From Glycera tridactyla (lineage: Eukaryota), in contig CBFFRO010000022.1 of NCBI GenBank assembly GCA_965644265.1, positions 248,001 through 312,000 on the forward strand: 64,000 nucleotides of DNA, given 5' to 3'. Positions 23,392 to 54,137 of the stretch are shown piece by piece. Numbering within the stretch: position 1 is the first letter of the stretch; every line of letters begins with the position of its first letter. The position numbers and the translations under genes were made by a program. Below the pieces are notes generated by a model, which worked only from the letters and a program-made list of their open reading frames with translations, did not search any database and had not been told where the DNA came from.

Positions 23392-23724
23392 GTATGTCGT
23401 GAATTTCAAAGAGGTACGTGTGCGCGTCAGCCAAGTGACTGTCGCTACGCACACCCCACTGATAATGTAACGGTTGATCTGACTGACAACTCGGTTACCG
23501 TGTGTATGGATCACGTTAAGGGGAAGTGCTCGCGGGATTCTTGCCGCTACTTTCACCCTCCTGCGCACCTTCAGGTGCAGATTAAAGCCGTTCAACAGCG
23601 GGCTAGTGTCTCGAACGCCGCCACCAACGCTGCTGCCGCCGCCGCCGCCGCTGCTGGTGGCCTCACCTGCCCTGCTACTACTACCGTGCTGCCACCTTCT
23701 GCTGCCCCGCCGCACTCCACCCTG
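23392..23724 (+). CDS. MBNL: Muscleblind-like exon with tandem CCCH fingers (ZnF3/4 type) and a 9-Ala tract, phase 0/0
   Basis: [21 protein letters not shown] (CX7CX6CX3H) and [30 protein letters not shown] (CX7CX4CX3H) match the MBNL signature. Acceptor tatattttcag| at 23391. Donor CTG|gtagga at 23725 is the best candidate; the 3' boundary is less certain than the 5'. Confidence 0.95.
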
Positions 23725-26700
23725 GTAGGAACTCGCTTCCTCTCTTAAATCACAACCCTGAGAGCGAATGCGGATCCAGTGTTGGTGCAACACTGGTCGG
23801 GTGTGAGGACGGGTGTTGCACCAGAACTGGGTGTGCATCACATGCTCTGAAGGGCCCAACTTATCCACTGGCTTCCTCTCATCTCTCTTTCTTCCTATCT
23901 CTCTCTCTCTTCTCACCACTCATCATCTTACACTCACCTCTCACACTACTCATTCCACCTCTCTGTTTCTCTCTCTTGCTCAGTTGCCATGGTAACATGA
24001 CAACATCTGTTCATCTTCTCTACCCTTAGCCTTATATATTTTTTCAAGTCCATCATTGCATTTTGGATACATGCTCCAACTTCTATCTGGGAGCAAATTC
24101 TTTCAATCAATTTGAGAAAAGTCAATTGATCAGCATATAAGGCCGGCAAAAATATTCTCAAATCTTTCCGGAAATATATTTTTGATGATTTTATCCTATT
24201 TTGACAGAGAGTACTTCACACCGAGAGAAGTTGATCTTAATATTTATTCATTCAGAGTTCCATTTTTCTGTCTCTGATTGCAGACATGCATGCAAATTAT
24301 TATAGTTATTATCACTGTTTTATCATTGGGAAAACCGCTGTCATATATTGACAAATTCAGTAATTGCTTTCCTCGGCAAAAGGGAAGCCGGCTAGAATGT
24401 TCTGACTTGGAAAATATATCTCAAAGCACAATCTTCACAAAACAGCTGATTCAATGTAGAATTGATATGGAAAGACATCTCCAGAACTGCACAGAATGTG
24501 AGGCAGCAACTTAATGATTTCAAATTGTGATGAAATGACACCATCAATCCAATCCAGAATGGGTTGGTGAATTGAGAGTCAATTGTAGTCATTCTACAAA
24601 TAATATGTGCTCAGACAACCCAAGATATTCCAATTTTGCGAACATCGAATATCTACCAAAAGTTGGCAGTGCCTTCTTTCGTCCCAGTTGAATTCACGGG
24701 ATGGTCAGACTGTTACTGCAAGATATCTGAGCTTGAGATTGATGAGGAATAGCAGTTCGAATTCATACATGATTTTCATAATAAATCTAGGCCAAGGATT
24801 TCTGGCATTCAGCAATCAGTGCAAAGAATTACCAACAAAAAATCTGAGTAAAACGTCATGCTGAACTACTGTATTCCAGTTTTTCACTAGCTGTTAAAAG
24901 ACACCAAATCCTCTCTATTTAGACCAGCCAACTTCATGGAGGCATGTCCTTCTAGCTCCTTCTCTGACTTGCTACAAAAAACCTACCAACTTTACTCGCT
25001 TACTTACCCGCCCAGAGCCTGCTCTCTCCCTGTCTCTCTCAGTGCCTGGCTTCTCTGTATGAATGCCGCCAAATGACAGTCTTTGAACAGCCAATGAGAT
25101 GCGAGCACACTGTAGATACACTTCCTTTCATGTGCTTGACCAAACCTGCTTCAGCTTACAAAACTTTTTTCCCTCCTGCAGCTAAAGCTATTGCTGCTCT
25201 AGCCGGCTTCGCTTGGCCACATCTATTGTGCTTCAGATGACTAATTCAGTGCCTCTTTAACCCGTCGCCACATGTGTCCACATTCGTCCACGGGTTGCTT
25301 TTGCGATGTAGCCTTTTGCGTACCTTCCAATGTGGCATCGTTTTCACTTTGATCCACTTTGTTCAGTGGATGAAGGTGACGGCTCTGTTTCTGAGGTTGG
25401 TGGGCAAGAGTGGTGCCTATACACTGGCAGGTGGTGGACCAATATGGACCAATGAGGACCAAAAATATGGATGAAAATTCCCGCAAGCACGTCACTGCTG
25501 CTGAGAAATCCAATCTTCACCCTCACTAAGGTTGGGGTAGATCATTTCAGATCCATCATTGGTAGTATACATATTCTACTACTGGATTTGCCGTTTCTCA
25601 AATATTTGACATTGTGACTCAAGGCAAATACATTTAGGAAAAATGAATATCTGGAAATCATTTGTGTCTTAAACATCATATGTGATGATCCATGAATGAA
25701 CCATTGCCAATTAATTTGTTTTTTCAACTTAAAGATGGGATATTTTTTGATGAATCATTTCAGCATGCAAAGATTTTTTTCATGCATCACTGCCATTTTT
25801 GAGTTGTGAATTTCAGTAAATCTTTTCCTTTTGTTTTTTGATGAATAAAAACATTGATGGTTTTTCTACCATAGATGTGGGGAGATTCCCAAATCATATA
25901 AAAACTGTGGCATTTCTAAATTGGGATTGCTTTTTGAAGTTAACCTAGCGAGCATCTAACTTTGATGAGTGGACAAAGCAGAGGGGGGCATTGATTTTTG
26001 CTACAAAAATACAGAATGACCTACCTGATAAAAACCCTCAAACATAAGTGTGCGTGTGTGTGTGTGTGTATGCATGCGTGCATGTGTGACAAAAGATCAT
26101 GTGAATTTGTGTTGGGCATGTTTGTGAAGGACGAACTGACGGAAGGACAGATGACAGACATTGCCCCTATGCACACACATACACACACATTGGTTGTGTT
26201 CAGGTGTGATATTTCAATTGTTAATAACTGAAATGAGATCCCGGACATGTGTGAGAAAATAAGAATTCTCCGGCTCCAATCATCCAGTCCATCAGCTGCC
26301 CCCTGCTTCCACCATCACTGCTTGCGCCCTCACAGTGCAGTAGCATTTAAACTTGCTTTGCTACCCCCTGCTTCATCCCCTCATCACAATGCGCCACCTG
26401 ACCAAAACTCACTCTTCCGGCTTTGCTCGTATTCGAACTGACAACTAAAGTGCGCCAACACAAGCAGGTGACAAGAGATACAATTTTGGCCAAAAGATGA
26501 ATTGCGAGAAAAATGCCACATGTTTTGTCATATCCTGAATCTCATTCATCAAAGAGGGAAAGACTGAGGGGTGGTAAAATATTCATCACTTTGAGTTCAC
26601 TCAGAAGCATTTTTTCTCGTATTTGATTTTTTTCTGAGAGTGAAAAGATGAATGTTCTCATTTATGCTATGTTATGTTGTTTGTTATTTTTAGAACACAA

Positions 26701-26729
26701 AAAGGCATGCTTCTTAGGTTGCTGAATCT

Positions 26730-27010
26730 TATAACCGTAATGCTGGCCTCGAAGGTGTCACACTGTCAGCGCCGTCCGCCGTATGCTCTCCGTATCCGTC
26801 CGTCTTCTTCACCATCAGTCACATGCTGACCACCATCTTACTGACCCATTTGTTCAGTCTCAGAACAAACTCTTCCCATTCACTCATCGAATAAACTTTG
26901 AAATCTCCATTTCCACAGCTGAAACTTTCAGAACACATCAGGGTTTGCACAAAAATTATCAACCATTTTCAGCATCAAAAAGTTCTGAGGTCAAAGTTCT
27001 GTGGCCAGAA
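26730..27010 (+). mobile_element. Possible degenerate HINE-like repeat fragment
   Basis: cgccgtccgccgt...ccgtccgtc motif near 26770-26805 and gaggtcaaag near 26988 echo the 7298 element; no intact terminal hairpin seen. Confidence 0.3.
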
Positions 27011-30000
27011 CTTCTGTAAGATATTCATGTGCAGTGAGGTGAGCAAGTTTGATTCTCACCAATTAGTCATTCACTCATGTATTGGGAAGTGAAGCAGCCC
27101 ACAGTGCAGTCATTTGAACTGTGAACTGCTGTCATTTTGAATGAAAGCAGAAAGAAATAACATCTCAATCATCAGCTTTTTCTCCATGTGTAATTCTTGA
27201 GAGTTGTTCCAGTCTTTGCATAAAAAAATCAACTAACTGTGCCCATGTTTGCATTTTGTTTCATTTTGGTTGATTGTGGGCATGGAAAGTGATTGTTTTG
27301 CACATGTGGTGGAACTCTTCATTGCGATTCATATTTCTAGCAACTCTCATCAGCTCTCGATATGAATTGCAAATGCAAAGTCCTACCCTATCGATTACAA
27401 ACTCAAAGTAGACACACCGTCAAGGAGGTCCCTTAATAACGAGGAATTTCACATTTGAATCTGTCTCCAGCTACCCCTGTAGCTCAAGAAACAGGTTCAG
27501 CATGGAAAATTCCATCTGAGTGTTCTGCCGTTTGATCCTGGACTTGTATCCAAACTGGATATCTGATGTAATTGTTCTAGGCAGCCTGTGTATATACATA
27601 TCCATGTACTTTTCACCCTAGCATGTGTGATTTTTCTCCAGGATTGTGGATGGATGGGTAGGCGTGCGGGTGGGGGGTTTCAATATTTGCACCTGGCCGA
27701 GTGGATGATTTCAGGTGGGATACAATTGTAGTATGGCACCTGGGTCCATCGACGACGCGGACAGTTGCAAATCAGGAAAACTATCAGTTTTAGTTTTGAA
27801 AGCATCTCCTTTCATCTACCAATACTTGATGTTTTCTTTCATTTCATAGCAGTAATTTTAGAAATGGTGCAGAATGATTTGATATACTCAAAAAGTGAAT
27901 ATTTGATGAATAAAAGAGAAGAAAATATGGTATTGATTGTAAACCTTTTTGGTGGAGTAGGTCTGTTGTGATCCAGATATGCGGTTTCCTCTCTACATTT
28001 TACTAGAGTGAATTTAATCCGTTCACTATAGAAAACCCCAATTTCCATTGAATCGATGAGAGTTGAGGTTTTGTTTAGTGGACTTTCTGTGCCTACATCA
28101 ATGCTACTCTTATTTGCTAATAGCTATGCATCAATGTCAGCTATCACAGGTTGAAGTGCAGATAGTTGTTGCAAATGGCTTTGATGCAAGTTTCGATTGT
28201 GCAGCAACTGTACATTTTAGGAAATTGATCTGATGGTCAGCGAAGATGGTCATATCTGGCTTAACTAAATAATTTTGAGTTTCCCCGTCAGCTTGCAATG
28301 GGGACTCATGTGGGGCAGTATGCAACCTTTTTTCTGACTGAACATGCTGGACTTGCTTAGCTGATGTTCAATTCACTCATAGGAGATAAATCATTCTGCA
28401 CATTTCTGGATTACTGTGTCCTATACTACATAAACACACAGACACATGTACACATACACATATACAGTAAGTAAAAACACCATAACTTTTACCCATGTTC
28501 CCCCATTCCCCTGTCCCTCAATTATATCCTTCTGCCAAATATATTCACTATTTCCCTGTTGTGATGCAGAAGACATTTCACATCTCATGATGTTTCTTTG
28601 TCATAGTCCAGTTTCCCCTCCCTACAGTTTTAAGACCCCACCCTATGCTGAATTTTTTCAAGTTCCAATGGTACTCACCCTTTCCCCCTTTTGCTAAATG
28701 AGCCTTCTTCCACAGAAATTACCAGTGGCGGAAATGAGTGAAAATAATTGAAAACACCTCAAGCGGTAACATGGCATCTGTAGATGATTGGGATCTTATC
28801 TTGAGGACATTTGATCAAAACCTCACAAGTTTCCTAAAATTTGCGACTTTGCTAGAATTTTATTATCCAAATGACACCTAGGAAACAATTAAATATATAA
28901 ACAGTGCTTGACAATGGTGTTGAGTTTCTGGGTTAGCATACATTAATTCCACCACGTGATACATAAGGTTTTTCAAGGCCTCAAAATTGTTGCTCAAGTC
29001 TCTGTGATTATCCCTTTTCTTCAGGCATCCACTTCTGTGCACTGCTTCTTGGTGTATATGATCAATACCATATGTTCTACCATTGATGCAAAGTTCTCAT
29101 TATCATTCACCTGCCACCGATGTCCACTGAGCATTTCTCCCCAAGTACATAGCATCCATACTGCTGCTGTTAGGGCAGGAACTGTAGGTGCCATGTTCCA
29201 CTGATGAATGGATAAAAATTAAGATATAGCAAGTAGCAGAGAATGAAAATGGATGCTTGTAGCAGGTGGACATGGACTACCACAAGGCTCATTTCTTTCC
29301 CCAATATGCCCTTTCCCATACCATCCCACCCACCTACCTTGCTTCTTGTCATTTTAACCTCTATCCTGATGTGGATTGAACAGAATATTGCTGGCAAGAA
29401 CACACTGACTGGATGCAAACACATGATTTCAGAATGTTGGTTTCTAACTGCAGGATTTCCAAACTGTCCAGAAATCCAGCTTTTTTCAATTGACAACAAA
29501 CCATTCTGTTCCTTTGTTTCCATGATGCGAGTTCTTGCTTTCATCACACAAATTATGAACCTTTTTATAGCAGTAGTGCCCACTGATAATGATCACAATA
29601 TTCAACATTGTGTCGTTCAATCTCTCTTTTCCTTTCTTTGGTGTATGTTGAAATGGTTAATGTGGGTTTATTCAAGGTTGACTGCTTAAAATTGAGATGT
29701 TTATGACTAAATGGTGGGAAAGTAGTTCATGGGGCATTCATATGAAATGTCCACATCTTACATCCTGCAATTGGTGTAATCCAGCCTAAAATATCATATT
29801 ATCTGGTAATCTGTGAAATGGGCTCTTTTGTACACTTTTGGTACAGATATGTCTCATATATTGCAATATTTGAATGACTGATATCAAATGAGAATGGGGA
29901 ATCCGAGTAAAATTGTTGAGAAATTAGTGATTATTGTTTACCCCATGAACTACTGATGTGATAAACACAATGCATTGGCACCATGCTATGATATTGAGAT

Positions 30001-33000
30001 GTCAGCTTGTTATGTTGTATAGCAAGAATACATGACGAATGTGAAGAGCTGAAAAATAATGGCATCAAATTCAATTAGCTTCACAAAGTCAATAACGCAG
30101 TGCCCAAAAATTCAGCTCTCACAGGATACTAATGTCTTCTTGTTTTTATACCATGGCTACCACGCATTTCACAGAACAAAATGAGCTAATTTGCAGTGGT
30201 ACAATTTTCATCACTGCCTTGATCCACTACTCCACTGGCGGAATTTCAGCCTGTGAATTGATGATTTATTGATATAATTCTGACCATCACGGGTCACACC
30301 GGGTCAAGCCATGGTATGATAATACATGTTTTAACCTCTTGATAACCACAATAATCCCATTCATTAAATAAAAAGCTGTGTGTATATATGTATATGTAAC
30401 TGCTTTATCTTCTCGGGCAAACTTATCTTTTCCAAAGTATATATTTTTGGTCCACAATTCACCTTCATGTCTGTGGGGGAGGGGGTTTGGGGTGGACTCC
30501 CACATTCTATTGTCCTATGAACCTTACGCATATACTTGTGGATATCAATTTTGACTGTGCTGGTTGCATTGTGTGTGTGAGCATGCATGCGTGCATACAA
30601 ACGTGCGTGCACATGTGTGTTATGAAGAAAGAGAGCACTGAATTGCTGAAACCTTTATACATATATACATATTGGCGCCAAAATTTCAGTTCAAAATATG
30701 CTTTGATGTGTGCTTCTAGGATTTGAGATAGTGTCAATTCTTTTTGTATATGTATATATATATTTGCAATGCCATGTTTGATGCCTGGGTTTATTGTGGT
30801 CATGTATCTCTCACTTTGGAAGCATGGGTGGCTGCTGCCTGAACTCTTAGTTTGTCTACTCTCCAGCAGAGCACCGGCCCCACATCTCCTACGCTCTCTG
30901 CCTCACTCAGTGGCTATGGAAAGTGAAATTTATGCTATTCTTCAGCATCATCAGTGGTGTTGACAATCTTGTAGATTGCTCATCCATCCATATCAAAACA
31001 AATCCAGAAACAAATTGACCCATCTGTCATGCATCATTATTGAACTTACTGAGAGTTTCAAAAAAAATATTGGCAACCTCCATTTGATGAATCCCACTCA
31101 ATGGAATTCCAGCCTTACTTCGTGATATGTTGTTCCAAAAAGAGCAGAAAACAAACATGTTCAGTTGCTCCCTGCCCTGAAGTCCTCTTGCCTTAGATTA
31201 AATGTAAATTCCCGGTTTGATGATCCACAAAATCACGGGTCTGTTCCACTAATATGTTGATGCACTTACAAATGAAATAGGTGCTCAAAGTTGCTCTGGT
31301 ATTCTATGAGTACCCTTGATCAACCAAAAACACCATCAAAATTTTCAAGTGTACCTTCAATTAGTGAAATGACCCATGGCGCATGTTTCCTTTCGCTGTA
31401 TTCTGTGCTTGACTTTAGTGGAGATTTCGATAAGAGCTATTTACATTCATATTATGCCCTTCCTAGTTAGTTGTAAACATTTATACCATGGATTTGGCAG
31501 CTCTGTGGCGCCTATATTATGTGTTTCTTCAAATGATCTGTGGTATGAAAGCAAGATCATATTTTCTGTAGTGTGATGAATGCAGTGACTCCTCTACAGA
31601 TTCTGGCATGTTCATTTGCACAATTTTGCTTTCACAGAGGTATAGGTTTACTGAATGAACATTATAGTTGATGCTTCTTTTTGCCATGCCCTCTGGGAAA
31701 ACTGTGGCGATTGAAAGCACCCACTACTGGATTTGGTAGACCTCTACTCTGATCGAATGCATCGCAAAATCTTGTGGTTCTACTTTCATATACAATCAAT
31801 GTATCAACTCAATTAAGAATTATGAGGTAGAGATTTGATATCACAAGCCCTACTCATGGCTTGTACATGCATAATATGCCAAAATCTACACGGTTGAGTC
31901 TTCCCATTCTCCCACACTCAGTCTTATAGTCTTGTCCTAGCCATTTAGTTCTCCCACTTGCTGCCAAAAGGATTCCTGTTTGATAAATGCATTGGCATCA
32001 CCTACTTCACTCACTCCCCGCTTGTGGAATTTCGCCCACCCATTGCAAGATTTTCATTGATGGCTGTGGGTTGTAGAGGCGTACTAGTGAGACACACCAC
32101 TGGGTGACATCACCATCACCTTTCTAACATTCATGCATGATCCTATTACCTCAGAACTGATGATTTACAAAAGGCATTTGACAAGAGATATCATAACTGA
32201 TATTTACTCCATTTTCCAACCAAAAATGGATCATACCAATTTCAAATTTATATTTGGTAAATGTGCCTAGTTCCAACATTGCTGAACTTTTGTTCCATGG
32301 CCACTACCATAATATCCAATTGAGAGCTCAAACCTGATGAGTGAAGCTTTTACTGAACAAAATATCAGGTTTTTGCTGGTTGAGTGTAAGTGGGTGCATG
32401 CTTAAGATCTCATTGGGTCAGTGTGTTGGAGCCTGGTGAGGACACCACTCTATGTGGTTTCCTGCATGAGGTTCTATATGAAAGCTGATCATTTGGGATT
32501 TTGCTAAGCATGAACAGCTGCTACGGATTTCAATGGTGAATTGTGATCATCAGAGATGCAAAAAACTACATAATCTGAGGGGTAATTCCAAGGATTTATC
32601 GAAATTGCATCCCATCCAGGAAATCTCCTGCTTTCATAACTCTCAGTAAGAAAAGTCTTAGTTACAGTGTCATAGGTCCCCTGTGGCTTCATAAGATATC
32701 CCAAAATAATGATTGATGACGATAGTAAAAGATTTTGCATTCAGTATGATGATGGTAGTGAATTTCAGTGAATCAAGGATGATGTTTGGAAAATTGTGCT
32801 GATATTCATTGTCTTTGTCATTCATGAAAATTCTTGAAAAGTTATATTGAAAATTACTGATTTGTCAGTGAGGAAAATTGGGTCTTTACCTCCTGATTGG
32901 CCATTCTCATTGCACCCTGCCCTCCAAACTCAGTGTCTGACACTGATAGGCTCTGTATTGTTGCATGATCAACCACCCATCACTGATTGGCTCAGCATTG

Positions 33001-34742
33001 TCACATTCCCCCCACTGGTTGGTTCTGTCGAGTCATGTGACTAGAAGGCCTGCCAGATTGGCTCAGCTAGATCACATGATGATGAGACTAGTCTGTGACT
33101 GGTTGTAGTCCGTTCAGGTTCAGGTGCAGGCACCCATTCTTTAGAACATATTATGACAACATTTGCAGGTGGTTAGTGGGCACAACTGGCCGCTGGGAAA
33201 GTAAAAAGGCCCCACGTCAAGCTTTTATTTTGTGTGTAACACTGCCTTTTCTCCGACAACTTGCTGATATGATCTTCTCTTTTACCACATGCAGATGGTC
33301 ACTCAACTAAAGAGGCTACATTCTTGTGGTTCACAAACACAATACGTTGTTGGTTCTGACCTGTGACCATGGCAACATGTTCATGGATGCTGAGGATACC
33401 GATTGGTGCCAAGTAATTTGACAGGCTCCTTTCATTCCAGTGCCCAAAAAGGAAACCCCATCATCATCAGCACCCAATTTGGAAGTCTTTACTCTGTCAG
33501 TTTTTATCGCAGCCATCCCGCACTTGGCATTTCACTGCTGCTTTCTTTCAGAACAACTGGGTCTCATCTCCCTTTTCTTAAAGAAATTGAAATGTCCCAA
33601 TGCTAGAGCCAACAGCTTTGGATGGTTTGACCCTTTCTGTACCGATGAAACTAGCAGTATTCATTGTATCATAATTATAGGTATGTGGCATGTCCAGTCT
33701 GCATATCAAGGTTCTACAGTGAACTCAGATACAGATACAACTCTTAAGATGGTTGTATTATCTGTCGTGGAAGCCGAATATATCCGGCCATATTGTATCA
33801 TATGGCAATTGTAAATAGACTTCTGATGAATGCTGTTATTTATTTATTTCCATGGAAATCTTGTTTGTGTCCCAATGGGATGTCCATGATGAAAAAGTCA
33901 GTAAGCAGATATTGACATTTCCATTATACAAAGTATATATAAATCATTGCATCATATTATTTCCAAGATGTATTGGTACAGAAAGGGTTGAGGTTTTTTT
34001 TGCTAGTTCTAGCTCTATATGCATCATCCAGTTCTTCACGTCTAATCAACAGAGCATCGTCACCAGCTTGTTTTGTTTTGTAGACATCACACCATCCCCA
34101 AAACACCATTCATCCAATCTGACAATAAAACAGTACTTTCTCAAACAGAATGGCAAGCAAATTCATGAGCCACCACCACCGATGATTCTCATGTATCCGA
34201 TTATTATACACTGTCTTGAATATTGTGAGGCTTATTTTCAGTCGTGGGCTTGCCTTTCACAGAGCTCTGACCTATTTATGAAATTTTTATTGTGTTGGCG
34301 TGCGCTCTGTTTTTTGCACCAATCCGCGTGCCGCTACTATTCTGTGTTCCACATGGTCGTGGCTTTCGGTAGAGGTTGTAGCTAGGGGGTCACGGGATCA
34401 TTACGCCTATGTTGCATGAGTGTGCATACAGGGGTCGCTAGTGTATTTTATAAACACCAGATGTTGCTGCTAACCACCTGTTTAGTGTCATGTCTCATCC
34501 ACGTCTGCAACGTTTCTATAGTGCGCAATTCTTCACATCTCTGAGTTGTAATGTCTCTATTCCTCACGTGATACATATTAATACGTTTTTCAGTGGCCTC
34601 TACCTAATTTATGTTAATTAAAACCTTATAATCTATATGGAGTCACCTATGATGAAAGGCATGCACCAAGACTGAAAAAGAGCTTCCTCATTTTTTCTCT
34701 CAAACTATTGGATTGCATGATGTTAAACTGTTTTACCAACAG

Positions 34743-34859
34743 TGCTGTTTTTTTCTTATTTCCCCATGATGCCTTGCCGCTTGCTGTTGTCATGTGCTGC
34801 GAACCCTGCCATGCTGCCATTTCATTGGCCAATTGCCAACGTGCTCGCATACTAATTAG
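34743..34859 (+). promoter_or_regulatory. YGCY-rich AG-exclusion zone upstream of the NLS exon (probable MBNL autoregulatory element)
   Basis: No AG from 34743 to 34857; 11 YGCY motifs counted by eye; no polypyrimidine tract next to the 3' splice site. Confidence 0.7.
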
Positions 34860-34931
34860 CCGCAAATGGTAGAGGTCATGACGGCCGCGGGCAAGAAACG
34901 ACCTCGTGACCCTGGCGATGATTTCATTCTG
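34860..34931 (+). CDS. MBNL: 72-nt cassette exon with NLS-like motif (PQMVEVMTAAGKKRPRDPGDDFIL), equivalent to vertebrate MBNL1 exon 5; phase 0/0; absent from the ORF track
   Basis: Acceptor ctaattag| at 34859 and donor CTG|gtacta at 34932; frame-preserving and CpG-rich. KKRPR lies between the ZnF3/4 exon and the KRAA exon, as the KRPL motif does in MBNL1 exon 5. Confidence 0.8.
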
Positions 34932-37215
34932 GTACTATGACCCATCATGCTTTGCATGTAGCCAGTAGTCTGCTTAGGATGATGTTTTGCACAGTCACAT
35001 GACAAAACCATGACTACCTATCGCTTCCTTGGTAATTTGTGTAGGCACGACTCTTGGTACTGGATTTCCCCACTCCCCAAACACTACGGTTTTTTTTTAG
35101 CGCGTCCGCTACATTGAAGGAGCCTTGGACCAGTCAGTACATGCACCTTGCTGTGGGTCTTGAGGGATCATGAATAATGAAAGGGAAATAAAGAACTGCG
35201 AGCTACTAAATTGGTTCTACAATGAGAAAATATCTGTGCTTTAATTCCTACCATATGTCTACTCTTTGACTCATGCACTCTTTTATCTGTTCTTGAATAT
35301 CTTGTAACTTTGAACAGACATTCTTTTCGTAATGTCTTATCCAGATTTTGCTTTCCAAACTTCATGACAGAAGCCTATAAGCGTGGTATAGGTGTGCAGG
35401 ACCGAGTATAAAGCAGTGCATGAGTTTCTCTTTGGACATTTATGGTAGAAATAAAGTGATACCTTTCCACCTTTATGTTTTAAGAAATCAGCAATTTGAT
35501 CAAGTTTGTGATAGACTTTAGAGCAATTCAATCTCCAGATTAGTATGTAGGAGCTTTCATTCAGGAAGATCAAATCAGAAATCTTTCACAAGTCTCACTT
35601 TCTCATAGAAATAATATGACATGAGAAATCTGGGAGAAAGTTTTTTCATATGGAATGTAGTCGAAATTCACTTCACACTGTATTTCTTGTGAACATTCAT
35701 GTAATCAGGAACATCGCAATAAATGATGATATATAATGAAGTCACTATTTTAAAACAGCACAATATGGATATTTTAACTATGCATTTGTCATTCATCTCA
35801 CTTCTACATATCACTATGCTGTAGAAGTGTTGGCAATCGAGAATCAAAATTTTTTCAATCTATTGGATTTTTTCCAATATCGAGCATCTTTCCAAGATGT
35901 TGGCTCCTGTCCATAGGTTACTAGGTATTTGGACAGGTATAAATACATGTATGTGTGACACAATTTAGAAATGGCATAGATTCTTTTATAGTAAGCATGG
36001 GGACAATTGCGTTCTCGTGATGATCTATCTGAGGGTGTTGGTTGAGATCTGCTTACAGTGAGGTGCATGTATACAGTGTCCTGCGCTCATCGTTTACACT
36101 GCTTGCATGTCAGGCACACTTTGGAGATCTTGATCATTTCACCTCTTCTCCTGTGTGCGGGCTAAGAGGTTTGGGCGCACTTTAATTTGACCATTCCTGA
36201 TTCCCATATTTCCTTATATAAAATGCTATTGATAGCCCTAGATAATAATACATAGACATGCAACACAGTTTATGGTGTTGGTTTTAAACTTGCACACCTG
36301 TTAATTAAAGATAGCCTTTCATCATTCGTTCTGGACTCTCTCATTCCTCAGATGCTCTCTTTCTGTCATGAATTGTGTGTCTAAATTGTACACTTTTGGT
36401 ATTGCTTTATATTCGACTAACGTGAAGAAGAATGCTGGAAAAGCTGCCAATGTCTTTCTTTCATCAGGCCACTAACGAGCATGCTTATATCTGTTACCAT
36501 CTTATTAGGAAGCAAGTTTCGGACATATTCTGTTCATTTATTGGCTGTAGAATGTTATCTGCACTGGGACAAAAATTGGCAAATTATTGAGGAAGAGCTT
36601 CTGTGACAATCCTCAATGCAGTTACTGGAGTTGATGTTGATCCATGGTTGAGCCTCTCCTCATAGGCTTGACCATGATTCATCTGCCAATTTTAACAACT
36701 GCAGGTCATTATCTAAACACGATGGAATTCCAGGGGTGGGATCAGCTTTCCGTATGTAGCCCTCAGTTCAGAGCAAAAGTTCCAGGAGGAAAATATTACT
36801 TGCCTAGAAATTTCAGGAAGAAAAACACAAAAAAGGTCTGACACTTGTCATGTGATTCTGCAAACTGAAGTAAACAAATATATGAAATTAGTTTATTTGA
36901 TATTTAAGTTAATGTGAAGCACATGTTGTAACTGTAGTCATCACCGGCAATGAGTTAGTATATACATGCATTGAGAGATAACAACTGTCTCTGTTTATTT
37001 CTTTGCTCAATTTTTCGGTATTTGATTACCAATTATATTTAATGCCGGGTTCAGATGGAGATGTAACCTGTAAATTGTCTTGTCTCCATCTCTTGAAACT
37101 GTAAATGAGCTTCACATATCAATCACAGCTGAGCCATGTGTGCGGTGAAATCAAACAAGCAATCAGAAGACAGGGACTTGTTGTATTTTAGGTTATTGTT
37201 GGTTATTCTTATTTG

Positions 37216-37216
<1 letters not shown>

Positions 37217-37257
<41 letters not shown>
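37217..37257. repeat. (TA)n microsatellite
   Basis: Directly visible. Confidence 0.95.
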
Positions 37258-37259
<2 letters not shown>

Positions 37260-37694
37260 CTTTTTCAGTTGATATAAGATCATTTGCCAGAACTGTAACT
37301 TCTGCATATTAGGCAAGCAGTCTTGCTAGGGAAATGCTGTTTTAATTCTGCTTCCGCAAATTTTTGTTATGTATGGTTCATGGAATTGGGGGACCGTATC
37401 TAGAAGGAGGGATTGGGATAGTTATTGTTGTATACAGTTTTATTTAGTAAGTTTGTATGTAAATGGACCAATCGCAGAACTATCTAACGGAAGAAAATTC
37501 TTCAACTGTCAGGATTCAGTATTATATGAAATAATATCAACAATATTGGTAGTGATAGTGTTCATGATGATGACATCCGGGGATTCTGCAAGTATCTAGC
37601 ATTGGTGATACTGTACCTAGTTCATATCTGAGCAACACCATGAATAGCATCAATAAAAATTATATTCATGCTGATAATGATGGTATTGGTGGTG

Positions 37695-37709
37695 ATAATA
37701 ATAATAATG

Positions 37710-37757
<48 letters not shown>
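37695..37757. repeat. (AAT)n microsatellite
   Basis: Directly visible. Confidence 0.95.
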
Positions 37758-37759
<2 letters not shown>

Positions 37760-40700
37760 ATTGTGGTGATATCAATAGTAACATGAACAACAATATAAGC
37801 AGCAAATATAACATTGGCAATAATCATATTACAGTTGATAGTGTAACTAGAAATTGATTCCCAAGAAATGGCTTTTACTCAAATTGTGATAGTAGATAGG
37901 TTGTTTTGCTGTGTAGCATTTCCACTTGGTACTGCTACTGCATATTGCATTGAAGCACAGCTGTATAACAAAAAAGATACAACTGGTCAATCCATAACTT
38001 GGAATTCTCATTAAATAAGCATTTGGGTATATACTGGTGGCATGCATCAGGGTTGGCAGTCTTCACTATTTTGTTATATACTTCAGACTCACTATATGTA
38101 AGTCACATTTAGGTTGCAGTGATCTGATATTATATTGTAAGTCATGTCACAAAAATGGATGATCAATTTTAAATAATAGGACACAATTCATCACTCTTAA
38201 TAATGCTCGAAGTGAATATTGCAGCACGAACAATCTTATACAAATTAGTGCTTTCTCGTGATTCTTCTTGTTCATCTCAGGTATCAGATAGAGACAATTT
38301 TGCATAAATTTTGTGATAAGTATTTATGCAGATTTGGGTTGAGGGAATGGGAGGGAGGTGAATGAGTCTTTGAAAATGGTCAGAATGAGCAAGTGTTTCA
38401 CACACTTAGGATCACTAAGCAATCACATGCAGATGTCCAAAAGCCATGCATGAATTACCAAACACTTGTCAGATACACGTCAGCTTTCAGATCAGATCAA
38501 CGTGTCGCAGTTCAGCGTAGATTCGATATAGAGAGGCAGATCTCCCAGCTACTTGGTGTTATTTTCTGATGTCATTGCTATTTGATCTTGTGCTGTCTTC
38601 AGTGTTATCATTTCACCGAATTCTGTTAGGCGTCCAATGCTCAGATTCTTCATCAGAGTGTCACCTATCTGCAACTGCGATGTCATGCAGCTGTTAAGAA
38701 AAATTCATTGGAATTTTCCAGAATTGTTCAAAATGCATTGGTTTTTATGAATTGCACAGTCTATGTTTTCTATGTTCCAATTCATCTCAATGATGAAAGT
38801 AAAAAGTCAACTTAAGTAGACTGTCTCATAAAATTTCAACTGGTGCTCAACATATTGTTAGCAACTGCCATATTATTCTGCTTTGTGCTCTACTGAAAGC
38901 TCAGAATACAGAATAATGTTGTTAGTTTCCCCAAGACGCTGGATGCACAACATGTATGGCATTTGTGAGACTCATACGTTTCTCAAAACAGTGACTACCA
39001 TCTTTGTTGCCCGTTATATGCAACATCTGATGGTTGCATGCTCTATGCAATGTGGGTATTACAACCTCATCTTTCAGCAAATGAACATCAGACTAGAATT
39101 CAACAGATAGGTGTACATTATTGGTGAATTGGTGACAAGCGTGAGGTTGAGGTGCTCAAGATTACTTGAGTTAGCTAATTTATTTGCTTGTTTATCTTTC
39201 ATGAGCTGCATCCCGTCTGGTTCCATTCCAGTTTCAGTATCTGGCTTCACACATTGTCCTTATGCCACACTTATGCCTGTCCAGAAGGCTAAATTTAGCA
39301 GGCACAGGATGTTGGTTTTTGATATTGCTTGGCATGGTCATATGACTACGTCTCTGCCCGAACCTCAATTTATTTGCCTGCCTGCTGTGCAGAGTTGAAG
39401 CATGTATTACAAGGCCTATATCAAGTCAAAGACTGAAGTGTGGCATAACTACAAGATGTCCTATGCATGTGATATGGGTGAGAATGGATGGCACTTTTGG
39501 AGTATGCTATCCCATGGAATGTTGTAGTGGCAAAAGTCTGTCTTATGTGTTTTTCTCATTCATATCCTGTGCGTAGGGCATTATTGTCATGAACTCACCA
39601 GCGTATTGTCAATCATTTCTCACCACCACTGCTCTTCATGCTCCGCTTGGCTTCTGTATCGGCAGGAAGTAAAATTTGCAGCTCAGTGGTTTCAACATGG
39701 TGGCACACACTAGCTTTCTGATTTTTAGTTTTTCTTGACCCTCTCTCCTGCTCCCCCTCTTTTGCCATTGCAAAATCTCAACAGATGATACCCCAGCATG
39801 AACGTGATTTGCCACCACTCGGTGGTGATATCATCAGCTATGAACCCATCTTGTGGTGACCTGTCAAAGCTAGATGCCTCACTTTTATTCTTTTCGAATT
39901 CACCTGGAGGTCAAACACTAATTGGTATGGCTGGACTGCTCTAATCACCTGTGTGCTACTCCGTATTCTTGGTGTCCGTGTGTCTTTATTGAGCTGATGA
40001 TGGCTGAGGCTTGTTTTCTGTTCATATTCGTTGATAACTAATTCAATGTTAATGTTGAAACAGGCACACCGTCCTTACCCAATGCCGGGTGTACCACTCT
40101 ATGTGCCAGGGCCAGGTCAGTAAGCGTATTACCGTAGGAATGGCATTCTTGCAACGGCTTTTAATGTTGCTTTTACTCCGTAAGCAGTTGTGACTCGCTT
40201 GACATGATTATTGTGGCAAAACACTCGCTGCTGCAGGCATATCTTGTTAGTGCCACTTGCTTTTCACTCAATCATTCAGCGGTCCCGATTTGTATATCCG
40301 GTATGGGCTTTGGAACCTGATTGCTAAAAACTCTTGTTTGTGTCAGTGGGGGAGTTTAATTACAGGGCATGGAGAAGTCTCTGAATTGGCTTAGCATCCA
40401 AGATTGAAAATGCATTGACCATAATTGAGCTGTAGATAAGTTCTTTTTTCATCTTAGTCCCTTTTACACTAAACTTGTGTTGATTTCATTAAAATGCTTA
40501 ATTATCTATTTAACAATATATTTATCGACAAAAGTGTCATAAATATAAAATAAACCATGTGTCTTGATGTGGCATGCTGATTGTCCGTTGTATCCGGCAT
40601 ATTTACTATACAGCCCTGTCTGCTAGCCCCCCTCTTCCAGTATTAACCTATAACATGTTAATCTCCTCAGAAGCACATCAAAAAAGCACTTGTGGTGATA

Positions 40701-42599
40701 CGTCTTGGTTAGGTGGATGTTTCTCGATGAAGAAAATCCCTGTCCTATATTGATTTTCTTGGGATAGCCTCTGAAAGGCCAAATTCAGGCCTATCATTTC
40801 ATGGGTGATACCCTAATACATCAGAAACTATTTGAGCATTGACACATCTCGCGTGATCATAATGGAAGTTCTAGTCGGTTCAATGTTTCATTTTTCAAGT
40901 TGATTGGAAGTTGCAAACTGCACTGCAGACTAGCCCCCCGAAATATGTGATACAAGGCGTATGCTTTGAAATAACCCGTATCTCTTTGAGCCATACCTTT
41001 CGAAATTGTCACTTGCCTCTGAATGGTCATCAGGGGCAAGAGTACTACTTGGATATTCTGAGGGTGGATTGTGGATTCAATGGAAGTTTGTGGTGGGACA
41101 CTGGGCAGCAGTTAGCTCCAGTGGACAACAGTTCTGTACATGGAAAAGTAAGTGGCCAGCCTACTAAGTTTTCTACTGGTGTTGACGTCCATTGTCAAAA
41201 GAGATTCACGATCAGGGAGTTCACAGTTTTGTCACTGAGATCTGCATCAGTTTTTTCATCTTTGTTAGTGCTTCCCCAGAGAGTGGAATAGTCAGGCTGT
41301 TAATACTCCATCTACCTTACAGTTGTGTTCATCAGTTTCTTCCAGTCGATGCCCAGTTGGGGTTATTTTTCTACTGTGATACCCACTTCTCTTGGCTAAG
41401 GGTTCTTGGGTACATTTATTGACTTATGCATTGGAGAGTGTTGGATGAGACTGCTTCTTGCAAGAATGAACAGCTTGGGAAGATTTTCAGCTAAGCAGGG
41501 AAGTAGTTTTGAGGATCCAGTTATGAGGCAAATCTGTGAATGGTGGTTTTTGCTTTGTTCATGAGAATGGAACATGATATGGAGAAAGGGATGACTTACA
41601 ATACCCAAGTTATGTGTAATGATAAATGTCGTCATAATCCATCCAGAAAAATACAATCACAGTCAGGAATAAATTAAGAATAAGTACACTATGCTTGATC
41701 TAATTTAACGAAGCATTAGAGATAAACTAACAAAATTATTCAGGAATGGATGTTCACTCGAGAATGCGCTACCAGTAATCATTCCAGGGTAACAAACAAT
41801 CAAGGGTCCAGGGACTGAAGGTCTCCTCCATACATTTCAAACCTGCGGAGCATTTAGAATTCATGCAGAATGATCTAGTACATATCAATACACCAATGCG
41901 GAATAAGTGATTAAGTGTTGCAGACACATTAGCAACGTAAATCATATGAACGTTGATGAGCAGAAGGTCCAAGCATATCTTGGATGTATCATCAGAACAT
42001 AAAGCAATTTTATTGGCCTAAATAGGTCCATATTCATACTGGATTTGTTCCACTCTTTTTCCGCTATGCATCTTGTATGTATTACCAGATCAACGTAATT
42101 TGTTTTCAGCCTTGTGACAGTCTTCACACTGCTGTAGGCTTTCGAGGGTGAATAATTGTCATTGGTTATGTGGCTCAAACAATTGGCTATGCCGCATTTG
42201 TAGAGAAAGACTTAGCGGCTGCCGCTGCTTCGATGTAGCGCACCAATGAGATTGCTTGTTTCATTTCTCGCTCGCCATGGTTTCTATAGTTACCAGTTCT
42301 TTCCTTACTATGTTACAAATGGTCACATTCTATGTTATTTTTTCTGTAAGAGTACTTAATATGCCATCACTTCTCACATTTGGAATGGCAAGGAAATTAA
42401 CTGTCTGTCTGCCATAGTCAGTGTTGTCAACTTGTAATGCTATACACCTGATTTCAATCAAAATTAATAAATTAGTAACAATGAGAAGAAGTGTAGCTGT
42501 AGTGAGACTTTAATGATTTTTATTTTCGTTTTCTCAACAATAGCCACCTGGTGGCATCTAGCGGAGTGTCTACATTTGATGACTTGCTCCGCATTGCAG

Positions 42600-42759
42600 G
42601 GTATGTCAGTACCGGGTATGGTACCTATGGTGAAGCGTGCAGCGGTTGCCGATAACAAGAGTGGAATTCCTATGTATCAGCCCGGCGCTGGTGCCGCGGC
42701 CTACCAACAAGCAGCTCTTGCTGCTATGCATATGCAACAACCATTTGTGCCCGTAACCA
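42600..42759 (+). CDS. MBNL: Muscleblind-like exon-6-like segment (GMSVPGMVPMVKRAAVADNKSGIPMYQPG...QQPFVPVT), phase 0/1
   Basis: Acceptor gcattgcag| at 42599 and donor CCA|gtgagt at 42760. The KR..A...G.P.YQ....YQQ...QQPFVPV pattern is typical of Muscleblind C-terminal regions. Confidence 0.9.
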
Positions 42760-52494: not shown

Positions 52495-52579
52495 TTGCTG
52501 GACACCCTCCCAGTGTGCAGAGATTTTAAGTCTGGACAGTGCAAGCGGCCACAATGCAAATATGTTCACCTTGTAGAAG
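52495..52579 (+). CDS. MBNL: Exon encoding an additional CCCH finger (LLDTLPVCRDFKSGQCKRPQCKYVHLVE), phase 0/1; absent from the ORF track
   Basis: Acceptor ttgttcttacag| at 52494 and strong donor AAG|gtgagt at 52580; CX7CX4CX3H preceded by the MBNL-type (L)xVC motif. Confidence 0.9.
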
Positions 52580-54018: not shown

Positions 54019-54137
54019 ATTATGTAGAAGTTTTGGACGGCAAAGTAACAGTATGCCGAGATGCGGCAAAAGGGAAATGCTCTCGTGCCATGTGCAAGTA
54101 TTATCATATACCAATACTGCCGCATCTACTTATCTAG
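54019..54137 (+). CDS. MBNL: Terminal coding exon with the second finger of the extra pair ((D)YVEVLDGKVTVCRDAAKGKCSRAMCKYYHIPILPHLLI*)
   Basis: Acceptor ttttatctcatttcag| at 54018; g+at=GAT joins the phase-1 donor at 52579. CX7CX4CX3H preceded by VTVC as in MBNL even-numbered fingers; TAG at 54135-54137. Confidence 0.9.

What the first reader, a model, noticed from the sequence alone, without database searches (positions are those of the whole stretch)
34743..34970. MBNL1 exon-5-like NLS exon whose intronic flanks resemble the vertebrate ultraconserved autoregulatory element
Seen: a 72-nt KKRPR exon, an AG-free upstream zone with 11 YGCY, and blocks ccccatgatgc, gcttgctgtt, gaaccc, tggccaattgcca, gtgctcgc and ctaattag|; downstream CTG|gtactatgacc...gcatgtagc. 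Established: human MBNL1 exon 5 contributes to nuclear localisation and is repressed by MBNL through a highly conserved YGCY element with a distant branch point. From memory, these blocks occur in the same order around human exon 5; I could not align them here. If confirmed, this is nucleotide-level conservation of a splicing element between vertebrates and an invertebrate.
Basis: partly seen in the sequence, partly recalled or inferred. Interest (0 to 1): 0.85.

Follow-up and report, generated by a model that had tools for sequence, protein, structure and literature searches.

The report
Ancient self-regulating splice switch in muscleblind
The short optional exon of this invertebrate's muscleblind (MBNL) gene is flanked by intron sequence that matches, block for block, the ultraconserved element through which vertebrate MBNL controls its own nuclear localisation, so this non-coding switch probably dates back to the common ancestor of bilaterian animals.

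Summary
Observation confirmed and interpretation supported. The window holds a lophotrochozoan-type MBNL gene on the + strand. A 72-nt, frame-preserving exon (34860-34931, ...GKKRPRDPGDDFIL) lies between the ZnF3/4 exon and the KR-containing next exon, as vertebrate exon 5 does.

Upstream is a 115-nt AG-free zone with 11 YGCY and no antisense-type RGCR.

I fetched MBNL loci from a pearl oyster, horseshoe crab, acorn worm, starfish, seahorse (mbnl1), arowana (mbnl2) and a coral. Intron-only profiles built from invertebrates hit the two fish loci only at the 3' end of intron 4 (E about 2e-8). A fish intron profile hits the 64-kb window only at 34761-34858 (E=2e-5). Printed mouse Mbnl1 oligos are identical to the seahorse sequence.

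Flanks of the neighbouring constitutive exons do not align even to the oyster. The coral shares the architecture but no significant sequence similarity.

Most likely mechanism, inferred and not tested here: MBNL binds the YGCY array between a distant branch point and the 3' splice site and represses an exon that carries half of a bipartite NLS. Conserved UGCAUG sites suggest Rbfox input.

The exon and its autoregulation across bilaterians were published in 2023. I found no report of cross-phylum nucleotide conservation of the introns. The scan's earlier notes do not report this element on other DNA.

The parts
34699..35004 (+). Full extent of the conserved element: intron 4 end, cassette exon and intron 5 start
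   Evidence: Searching the window's whole introns (23725-42599) against whole orthologous loci gave one significant blastn hit for Pinctada, Limulus, Saccoglossus and Scleropages, always this stretch: 34701-35004 vs Pinctada (E=9e-56), 34743-34962 vs Limulus (3e-24), 34699-34954 vs Saccoglossus (4e-16), 34761-34962 vs Scleropages mbnl2 (3e-4). Hippocampus gave only an unrelated short hit elsewhere (window 26048-26088) and Stylophora none.
34714..34719 (+). Upstream UGCAUG (Rbfox-type site) just 5' of the predicted branch point
   Evidence: One TGCATG lies at -146 to -203 in all eight species compared, coral included. In C. elegans a GCAUG upstream of the homologous exon mediates FOX-1 repression (PMC10773944).
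34731..34737 (+). Predicted distant branch point (TTTTACC, A at 34735, 125 nt from the exon)
   Evidence: This is the yUnAy match at the 5' edge of the AG-free zone. Equivalent matches (TTTAC, CTGAC, CTTAC) lie at -125 to -141 in Pinctada, Limulus and Saccoglossus. The mouse branch point was mapped 141 nt upstream (PMC7901844). Prediction only.
34743..34857 (+). AG-free, YGCY-rich zone: the putative MBNL-binding silencer
   Evidence: 115 nt without AG, with 11 YGCY and 0 RGCR. In the other seven species the AG-free zone is 127-190 nt, with 6-11 YGCY against 0-1 RGCR in the last 120 nt.
34762..34788 (+). Conserved blocks CCCCATGATGCC and GCTTGCTGTT
   Evidence: GCTTGCTG is invariant in the six bilaterians aligned. 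CCCCATGATGC is identical in both fish, and CCCATGATGC is shared with Saccoglossus. The mouse oligo as5 contains GCTTGCTGTT.
34823..34859 (+). Conserved blocks CATTGGCCAATTGCCA, GTGCTCGC and ATACTAATTAG, ending at the 3' splice site
   Evidence: Seahorse and Saccoglossus read CATTGGCCCATTGCCA (15 of 16 identical to the window). GTGCTCG is shared with both fish and with mouse oligo as7. CTAATTAG corresponds to the vertebrate mbnl1 CTAATTAAG.
34860..34931 (+). 72-nt cassette exon encoding PQMVEVMTAAGKKRPRDPGDDFIL (first KR motif of the bipartite NLS)
   Evidence: AG|...|GT boundaries, and only one open frame. Homologous peptides occur in annotated MBNL isoforms of Lineus, Octopus, Nucella, Biomphalaria, Limulus, Glandiceps, Acanthaster and Stylophora, and as vertebrate exon 5. 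Lineus isoform X8 has the exon and isoform X2 lacks it.
34932..34942 (+). Weak, conserved 5' splice site GTACTATGACC
   Evidence: CTG|GTACTATGACC is identical in seahorse mbnl1, and mouse oligo as10 covers it as far as CTG|GTACTATG. CTG|GTAYT is found in all eight species. Positions +4 to +6 do not match the U1 consensus.
34949..34963 (+). Downstream block GCTTTGCATGTAGCC containing UGCAUG (34953-34958)
   Evidence: 14 of its 15 nt are identical in arowana mbnl2 and Pinctada. TTTGCATGTAGC also occurs in Limulus, always 21-29 nt after the exon.
23392..23724 (+). Context: the ZnF3/4 exon of the same MBNL gene
   Evidence: CCCH scan and tblastn: 70-79% identical to Lineus and Pinctada ZnF3/4. phmmer E=1e-65 and below to MBNL proteins.
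42600..42759 (+). Context: exon-6-like exon carrying the second KR motif (MVKRAAVADNKSG...)
   Evidence: It aligns to the Lineus and Pinctada exon that follows the cassette.

Best explanation
This is the invertebrate orthologue of the vertebrate MBNL exon-5 autoregulatory cassette. It was inherited, together with its flanking intron sequence, from the last common ancestor of bilaterians.

The 72-nt exon adds a KKRPR motif. With the KR motif of the next exon, this completes a bipartite nuclear localisation signal.

The exon's splice sites are deliberately poor:
- The branch point is predicted about 125 nt upstream.
- There is no pyrimidine tract next to the AG.
- The 5' splice site is non-consensus (GUACUA).

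The roughly 115 nt between the branch point and the 3' splice site is a single-stranded array of YGCY motifs. When nuclear MBNL is abundant it binds this array and blocks use of the 3' splice site. The exon is then skipped and the new protein is less nuclear, which makes a negative feedback on nuclear MBNL. The UGCAUG sites just upstream of the branch point and about 22 nt downstream of the exon would let Rbfox proteins tune the switch.

Shown here: the anatomy, and sequence homology of the introns across phyla.
Inferred from work in mammals and C. elegans: alternative use of the exon, MBNL binding, branch-point position and NLS function in this animal.
For: Position and peptide
- The exon lies between the ZnF3/4 exon and the KR exon and preserves the reading frame.
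- Homologous peptides occur in MBNL isoforms from cnidarians to vertebrates.

Intron homology, using intron sequence only
- blastn of the window's upstream 160 nt against whole loci: E=7e-31 for Pinctada, 7e-11 for Limulus, 2.8e-4 for arowana mbnl2. Each is the top hit and lies at or within about 16 nt of the exon.
- nhmmer profiles: invertebrate profile against fish E=1.5e-8 and 2.4e-8; fish profile against the window E=2.1e-5; protostome-only profile against seahorse 8.8e-4, Saccoglossus 3.7e-14 and Asterias 2.7e-8.
- Dinucleotide shuffles: z=5.1-5.7 upstream and 4.7-8.6 downstream against the two fish.

Specificity
- Flanks of the ZnF3/4 exon and of exon 6 give no orthologous hit in any locus.
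- For four of the six loci, the whole 18.9 kb of introns matches only at this element.
- The exon itself gives no nucleotide hit to the fish.

RNA-level signature
- 6-11 sense YGCY against 0-1 antisense in all eight species, and AG-free zones of 115-190 nt.

Vertebrate mechanism
- MBNL1 represses exon 5 through the YGCY region between a branch point at -141 and a weak AAG (PMC7901844).
- Ciona, fly, worm and Trichoplax MBL proteins all repress the human exon-5 minigene (PMC5041496).
- C. elegans MBL-1 represses its KR exon, and that exon makes the protein nuclear (PMC10773944).
Against: - No transcript of this species was found, so inclusion and skipping are not shown here.
- No binding or splicing data exist for this animal.
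- Pairwise similarity to vertebrates is modest without gaps: 67% over 90 nt.
- A gap-tolerant global aligner that gives 83 of 103 identical positions also gives 68 +/- 6 for random segments. Only the local-alignment and profile statistics should be relied on.
- The coral shows the architecture but no significant sequence similarity.
- Several of the best conserved blocks (CATTGGCCNATTGCCA, CTAATTA) contain few or no YGCY, so factors other than MBNL must contribute.
Confidence: 0.8

Rival explanations
1. The element is homologous and acts on splicing, but MBNL is not the main reader. The conservation would mainly reflect other factors (Rbfox at UGCAUG, PTB or CELF on the pyrimidine- and UG-rich stretches, or the core splicing machinery at an unusual 3' splice site), and in this lineage there would be no autoregulation.
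For: - UGCAUG is conserved on both sides of the exon.
- The longest invariant blocks contain few or no YGCY.
- A UACUAAU branch-site-like heptamer abuts the AG.
- FOX-1 co-regulates the nematode exon.
Against: - The strand-specific YGCY excess is kept in every species even where the surrounding sequence has diverged, coral included.
- MBNL dependence has been shown in mammals and in C. elegans.
Confidence: 0.12
2. The conserved DNA is a transcriptional enhancer or other DNA-level element that merely sits next to the exon.
For: - Most deeply conserved non-coding elements studied so far are enhancers (PMC3410860).
- ATTGGCCAAT contains CCAAT on both strands.
Against: - The element abuts both splice sites in the same orientation in every species.
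- Motif content is strongly strand-asymmetric: 11 YGCY against 0 RGCR.
- AG dinucleotides are excluded on the sense strand only as far as the splice site.
Confidence: 0.04
3. The resemblance is convergent. Independent lineages would have built YGCY clusters upstream of an MBNL-regulated exon, and the shared blocks would be chance.
For: - The coral has the same architecture without detectable sequence similarity.
- YGCY-rich sequences share composition, which inflates gap-tolerant alignments.
Against: - Profile E-values of 1e-8 and below, each a unique hit at the orthologous site in 90-220 kb.
- Colinear non-YGCY blocks.
- A graded series from protostomes through hemichordate and echinoderm to vertebrates, including a 25-nt stretch identical between starfish and seahorse.
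Confidence: 0.03
4. The conservation reflects a conserved RNA secondary structure or a hosted non-coding RNA.
For: RNAalifold proposes a 7-bp interrupted pairing between GCTTGC upstream and GCATGTAGC downstream, which would loop out the exon.
Against: - Consensus energy is only -3.25 kcal/mol, with a positive covariation term. The proposed exon-bridging pairs show no compensatory changes.
- The single-sequence fold has z=+0.33 against shuffles.
- There is no Rfam match at E up to 1.
Confidence: 0.03

Closest known systems
Vertebrate MBNL1/MBNL2 exon 5 (54 nt) autoregulatory ultraconserved element (Gates et al. 2011, cited in PMC7901844; the cited papers number it exon 5, an alternative numbering from my own knowledge calls it exon 7)
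   Same: - Same gene and same position, after ZnF3/4 and before the KR exon.
- A frame-preserving short exon with K(K)RP that ends in CTG.
- The same weak 5' splice site, CTG|GTACTATGACC.
- A long AG-free zone with a YGCY array.
- Colinear shared blocks: CCCCATGATGC, GCTTGCTG, GAACCC, CATTGGCCNATTGCCA, GTGCTCGC, CTAATTA(A)G, GCATGTRGC.
   Different: - The exon is 72 nt rather than 54 nt, and its 5' half is unrelated.
- The 3' splice site is UAG rather than AAG.
- About 18 extra nt (TGCCATGCTGCC...), shared with Saccoglossus and Pinctada, lie where the fish read ATGTTAATGCGCTT.
- Identity to vertebrates is partial, far from the 100% that defines a UCE.
- Function in this animal is untested.
C. 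elegans mbl-1 exon 7 autoregulation and the bilaterian KR-motif exon (Verbeeren et al. 2023, PMC10773944)
   Same: - Homologous KR-motif cassette exon.
- Inclusion makes the protein nuclear.
- MBL-1 represses the exon.
- A GCAUG/FOX-1 site lies in the upstream intron.
- That paper infers a bilaterian origin from peptides and annotated isoforms.
   Different: - The paper compares exon peptides across phyla, but compares introns only within Caenorhabditis.
- It states that conservation is almost limited to the KR motifs and that Ambulacraria lack the double motif.
- Here the introns themselves align across phyla, and hemichordates and echinoderms carry the exon and the element. Their second motif reads KK rather than KR.
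Bicores: human enhancers conserved between deuterostomes and protostomes (Clarke et al. 2012, PMC3410860)
   Same: - Non-coding sequence of about 100 nt conserved across the protostome-deuterostome split.
- Short invariant blocks in fixed order.
- Found in slowly evolving lineages (molluscs, chelicerates, ambulacrarians).
   Different: - Bicores are DNA-level enhancers upstream of genes, whereas this element is an RNA-level splicing element abutting an exon.
- That screen removed 150 nt on each side of every exon, so it could not have found this element.

Membership tests
MBNL exon-5 autoregulatory cassette | Lies in an MBNL gene between the ZnF3/4 exon and the exon with the second KR motif | tested here: met
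   ZnF3/4 exon at 23392-23724, cassette at 34860-34931, KR exon at 42600-42759, all on the + strand and in phase.
MBNL exon-5 autoregulatory cassette | Short frame-preserving exon encoding a K(K)RP motif that completes a bipartite NLS | tested here: met
   72 nt encoding ...GKKRPRDPGDDFIL. The next exon has MVKRAAV. NLS activity itself was not tested.
MBNL exon-5 autoregulatory cassette | Exon is alternatively included or skipped | not testable with these tools
   No transcript of this species was found. In orthologues, Lineus isoform X8 has the exon and X2 lacks it, and the Pinctada gene model skips an intact exon.
MBNL exon-5 autoregulatory cassette | Cluster of YGCY motifs in the last 90-120 nt of the upstream intron | tested here: met
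   11 YGCY against 0 RGCR. This is in the top 0.23% of windows and is reached by 0 of 2000 shuffles.
MBNL exon-5 autoregulatory cassette | Far-distal branch point (over 100 nt) with a long AG-exclusion zone and a weak 3' splice site | tested here: inconclusive
   The AG-free zone of 115 nt is met. The branch point is only predicted (TTTAC, A at 34735). There is no pyrimidine tract next to the AG.
MBNL exon-5 autoregulatory cassette | Intron sequence homologous to the vertebrate element | tested here: met
   Fish intron profile against the window: E=2.1e-5 at 34761-34858. Invertebrate intron profile against fish: E about 2e-8. Mouse oligos as5, as7 and as10 have their best window match at the orthologous spots.
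MBNL exon-5 autoregulatory cassette | Exon inclusion is repressed by MBNL protein | not testable with these tools
   Known for mammals and C. elegans. Distant MBL proteins repress the human minigene.
Ultraconserved element in the strict sense (Bejerano 2004) | At least 200 nt identical between human, mouse and rat | tested here: not met
   The definition applies to the mammalian copy only. The window shares short identical blocks of up to 14 nt with vertebrates. It is a homologue of the element, not itself ultraconserved.

The most novel reading that the evidence does not exclude
The intronic silencer around the MBNL NLS exon is a single homologous RNA regulatory element that has been kept at nucleotide level since before the protostome-deuterostome split. 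Its architecture may reach back to the cnidarian-bilaterian ancestor. It still works as an MBNL autoregulatory switch in this animal. That would make it one of the oldest known conserved non-coding regulatory sequences in animals, in a class (exon-adjacent splicing elements) that genome-wide screens for deep conservation excluded by design.
Probability: 0.6. Interest if true: 0.82.

Novelty: new member of a known kind. Interest (0 to 1): 0.72.

Why it matters
Nucleotide-level conservation of non-coding sequence between protostomes and vertebrates is extremely rare. The one systematic screen I read found two human elements, and it excluded the 150 nt beside every exon.

Here a medically important element, the switch that sets nuclear MBNL and is disturbed in myotonic dystrophy, has recognisable orthologues in a lophotrochozoan, a bivalve, a horseshoe crab, an acorn worm and a starfish.

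This gives three things:
- A natural mutational series showing which nucleotides of the vertebrate ultraconserved element are truly indispensable: 38 of the last 130 positions are invariant in six bilaterians.
- Evidence that factors beyond MBNL read the element, because several invariant blocks lack YGCY.
- A concrete system for asking why some regulatory RNA is frozen for over half a billion years.

It also corrects two published generalisations. Ambulacrarians do carry the exon. Many invertebrate MBNL genes encode four to six zinc fingers.

Tried and rejected
- Searching the paper library for the sequence blocks as text found nothing relevant.
- Gates et al. 2011 (PMC3190765) is not held in the library.
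- The look-up of encoding contigs failed for Lineus X8, Octopus and Nucella.
- The lamprey protein turned out to come from an intronless copy, so it was no use for introns.
- The amphioxus gene is too long for its DNA to be returned.
- No Rfam family matches the region.
- The element shows no unusual folding stability.
- There is no covariation-supported structure.
- The coral was never detected by blastn, shuffle tests or profiles, so I do not claim sequence homology for Cnidaria.
- A gap-tolerant global alignment gave attractive identities (83 of 103 to seahorse). Its null is 68 +/- 6, so I do not use it as evidence.
- The default MAFFT alignment misplaces the CCCCATGATGC block between protostomes and vertebrates.
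- A search for transcripts of this species containing the exon found only relatives.
Full report
**What is in the window**

A six-frame scan for CCCH zinc fingers and the ORF list show a muscleblind-like (MBNL) gene on the + strand.
- The exon at 23392-23724 encodes the ZnF3/4 pair. It reads VCREFQRG...CRYAHP...[27 protein letters not shown] and is bounded by cag|GTA and CTG|gtagga.
- The exon at 42600-42759 encodes GMSVPGMVPMVKRAAVADNKSGIPMYQP..., the homologue of the vertebrate exon that follows exon 5.
- The ZnF1/2 exons lie outside the window.

A phmmer search with the ZnF3/4 exon returned MBNL proteins from across animals. Among the hits whose source could be named, the closest were molluscs and a nemertean, plus a 98%-identical ORF from an unnamed ENA contig. 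Earlier notes of this scan call the genome "probably annelid". I did not test that.

The exon is 34860-34931 (72 nt). It is open in one frame only and reads PQMVEVMTAAGKKRPRDPGDDFIL, with ctaattag|CCG and CTG|gtactatg boundaries. Upstream there is no AG between 34743 and 34857, and there are 11 overlapping YGCY. The YGCY count falls in the top 0.23% of 120-nt windows of this window and is never reached in 2000 shuffles. The antisense-type motif RGCR occurs zero times.

**The exon is the homologue of vertebrate exon 5**

Peptides of the same form, sitting between ZnF4 and the KR exon, occur in annotated isoforms of the following:
- Lineus: PQVVEVLKGKKRPLDSAEELIL
- Octopus, Nucella and Biomphalaria
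- Limulus
- Glandiceps: KSNKKRARDPADEILHL
- Acanthaster
- the coral Stylophora: GSRKRPHDTLTEL
- lamprey and hagfish
- jawed vertebrates: TQSAVKSLKRPLEATFDL

Lineus isoform X8 contains the exon and X2 lacks it. The Pinctada gene model skips an intact copy.

**Getting vertebrate sequence without typing it**

PMC7901844 prints 17 antisense oligos tiling mouse Mbnl1 intron 4, exon 5 and intron 5. The paper states that the region is an ultraconserved element, with a branch point 141 nt upstream of a weak AAG and a YGCY region that mediates repression by MBNL1.

Through look-up of encoding contigs I fetched these genomic MBNL loci:

| Locus | Species |
|---|---|
| L001 | Limulus polyphemus |
| L002 | Scleropages formosus mbnl2 |
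| L003 | Stylophora pistillata |
| L005 | Pinctada imbricata |
| L006 | Hippocampus comes mbnl1 |
| L007 | Saccoglossus kowalevskii |
| L008 | Asterias amurensis |

Mouse oligos as6 to as11 are exactly present, in order, in the seahorse locus. So L006 stands in for the mammalian element.

**The intron flanks are homologous**

Read side by side, all the bilaterian loci show the same colinear series:
- UGCAUG, then a branch-site-like motif, then a pyrimidine run
- C(C)CCATGATGC
- GCTTGCTG
- CATTGGCCNATTGCCA
- (CAT)GTGCTC
- GC.T.CTAAT.A(A)G at the 3' splice site
- the exon, ending in CTG
- GTAYT at the 5' splice site
- GCTTTGCATGTAGC

I tested this with intron sequence only.
1. blastn of the window's upstream 160 nt against whole loci gave E=7e-31 (Pinctada), 7e-11 (Limulus) and 2.8e-4 (arowana). 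Each was the top hit and lay at or within about 16 nt of the exon. The downstream 80 nt gave 2e-8 (Pinctada) and 0.006 (arowana).
2. Local-alignment scores against 2000 dinucleotide shuffles, for window versus each species:

| Species | Upstream z | Downstream z |
|---|---|---|
| Saccoglossus | 16.8 | not significant |
| Limulus | 14.0 | 5.4 |
| arowana mbnl2 | 5.7 | 8.6 |
| seahorse mbnl1 | 5.1 | 4.7 |

3. nhmmer profiles:
- A profile of four invertebrate upstream introns hit the two fish loci only at the end of intron 4 (E=1.5e-8 and 2.4e-8 in 92 kb).
- A profile of the two fish introns hit the 64-kb window only at 34761-34858 (E=2.1e-5). It also hit Saccoglossus (1.7e-13) and Asterias (1.7e-10).
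- A protostome-only profile hit seahorse (8.8e-4), arowana (5.3e-3), Saccoglossus (3.7e-14) and Asterias (2.7e-8).

Starfish and seahorse share a 25-nt identical run. In a local-pair alignment of the last 130 nt, 38 columns are invariant in six bilaterians and 63 are conserved in at least five.

**Controls**

- The flanks of the neighbouring ZnF3/4 exon and exon 6 find nothing orthologous in any locus, not even Pinctada, although the ZnF3/4 exon aligns in every locus and exon 6 aligns to Pinctada.
- The window's entire introns (18.9 kb) searched against the whole loci gave a single significant hit for four of the six, always this element at 34699-35004. Seahorse gave only an unrelated short hit and the coral none.
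- The cassette exon gives no nucleotide hit to fish. Between phyla, the introns are therefore better conserved than most of the exon they flank.

A caution on identities: a gap-tolerant global aligner yields 82-105 identical positions of about 105-115 aligned, but random segments yield 68 +/- 6. I rely on the local and profile statistics only.

**Limits of the conservation**

The coral has the same architecture:
- UGCAUG at -159
- a 127-nt AG-free zone
- 9 YGCY against 1 RGCR
- a 45-nt KR exon ending CTG|GTACTA

No test detects sequence similarity to it. Homology of the cnidarian introns is therefore open.

**RNA level or DNA level, and structure**

The element abuts both splice sites in the same orientation everywhere. 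In all eight species YGCY outnumbers RGCR by 6-11 to 0-1, and AG is excluded for 115-190 nt. There is no Rfam match, no excess folding stability (z=+0.33), and only a weak consensus structure without covariation. This fits a single-stranded protein-binding platform in the pre-mRNA.

**Likely mechanism**

The model follows mammals and C. elegans. MBNL binds the YGCY array between a distant branch point (predicted A at 34735) and the 3' splice site and represses the exon. Skipping removes the KKRPR half of the bipartite NLS, so the new protein is less nuclear.

That MBL proteins from Ciona, fly, worm and Trichoplax all repress the human exon-5 minigene shows the protein side is conserved. This report shows the RNA side is conserved too.

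The positionally conserved UGCAUG upstream (all species) and downstream (five of eight) point to Rbfox co-regulation, as found for FOX-1 in the nematode. Invariant blocks with few or no YGCY imply further readers. All functional steps in this animal are inferred.

**Novelty**

Verbeeren et al. 2023 already showed that the KR exon and its alternative splicing are present across bilaterian phyla and that C. elegans autoregulates it. They compared introns only within Caenorhabditis. They state that conservation is almost limited to the KR motifs and that Ambulacraria are an exception.

Clarke et al. 2012 reported only two human non-coding elements shared with protostomes, after removing 150 nt around every exon.

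Six library searches and eight papers read gave no report of cross-phylum conservation of these introns. The library does not cover most subscription journals, so prior description cannot be excluded.

I file this as a new member of a known kind, with an unusually deep and previously unremarked nucleotide conservation.

Noticed in passing
window 52516-52569 and 54054-54107: Two further CCCH fingers lie downstream in the same gene (VCRDFKSGQCKRPQCKYVH and VCRDAAKGKCSRAMCKYYH). The same C-terminal pair is found in annotated MBNL proteins of Pinctada, a tick, Glandiceps, Stylophora and hagfish. Six-finger isoforms therefore look ancestral, which contradicts the review statement that invertebrates have one finger pair.
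   Followed up: partly
window 34849-34859: A UACUAAU heptamer, close to the canonical branch-site consensus, sits 5-11 nt from the 3' splice-site AG. That is too close to act as the branch point. CUAAU is kept there in seven of the eight species: all except arowana mbnl2, which reads CUAUU, and the coral. It may be a decoy branch site or a binding site for another factor.
   Followed up: no
L004:1001-2901 (Petromyzon marinus): A 447-aa lamprey MBNL protein that includes the KSLKRP exon-5 peptide is encoded by a gene range of only 1.9 kb. This looks like an intronless, retrogene-like copy fixed in the exon-included form.
   Followed up: no
L007:10324-10389 and L008:81289-81354: Hemichordate and starfish MBNL genes carry the KKRAR exon and the full intronic element. 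The published 'all bilaterian phyla except Ambulacraria' therefore applies only to the second motif, which reads KK rather than KR in Glandiceps.
   Followed up: partly
L005:33447-33512 (Pinctada imbricata): The deposited gene model (KAK3104468.1) skips an intact 66-nt KKRPRD exon with conserved flanks. The annotation therefore misses this isoform.
   Followed up: yes
window 34983-35004: A further downstream stretch (cacagtcacatgaca) is shared with Pinctada only, about 50-70 nt after the exon. This may be a lophotrochozoan-specific extension of the element.
   Followed up: no
proteins P0312 and P0330 (transcript-derived, unnamed species): Some lophotrochozoan-like transcripts join the linker directly to the exon-6-like sequence, skipping the ZnF3/4 exon. 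This suggests two-finger isoforms from a four- to six-finger gene.
   Followed up: no
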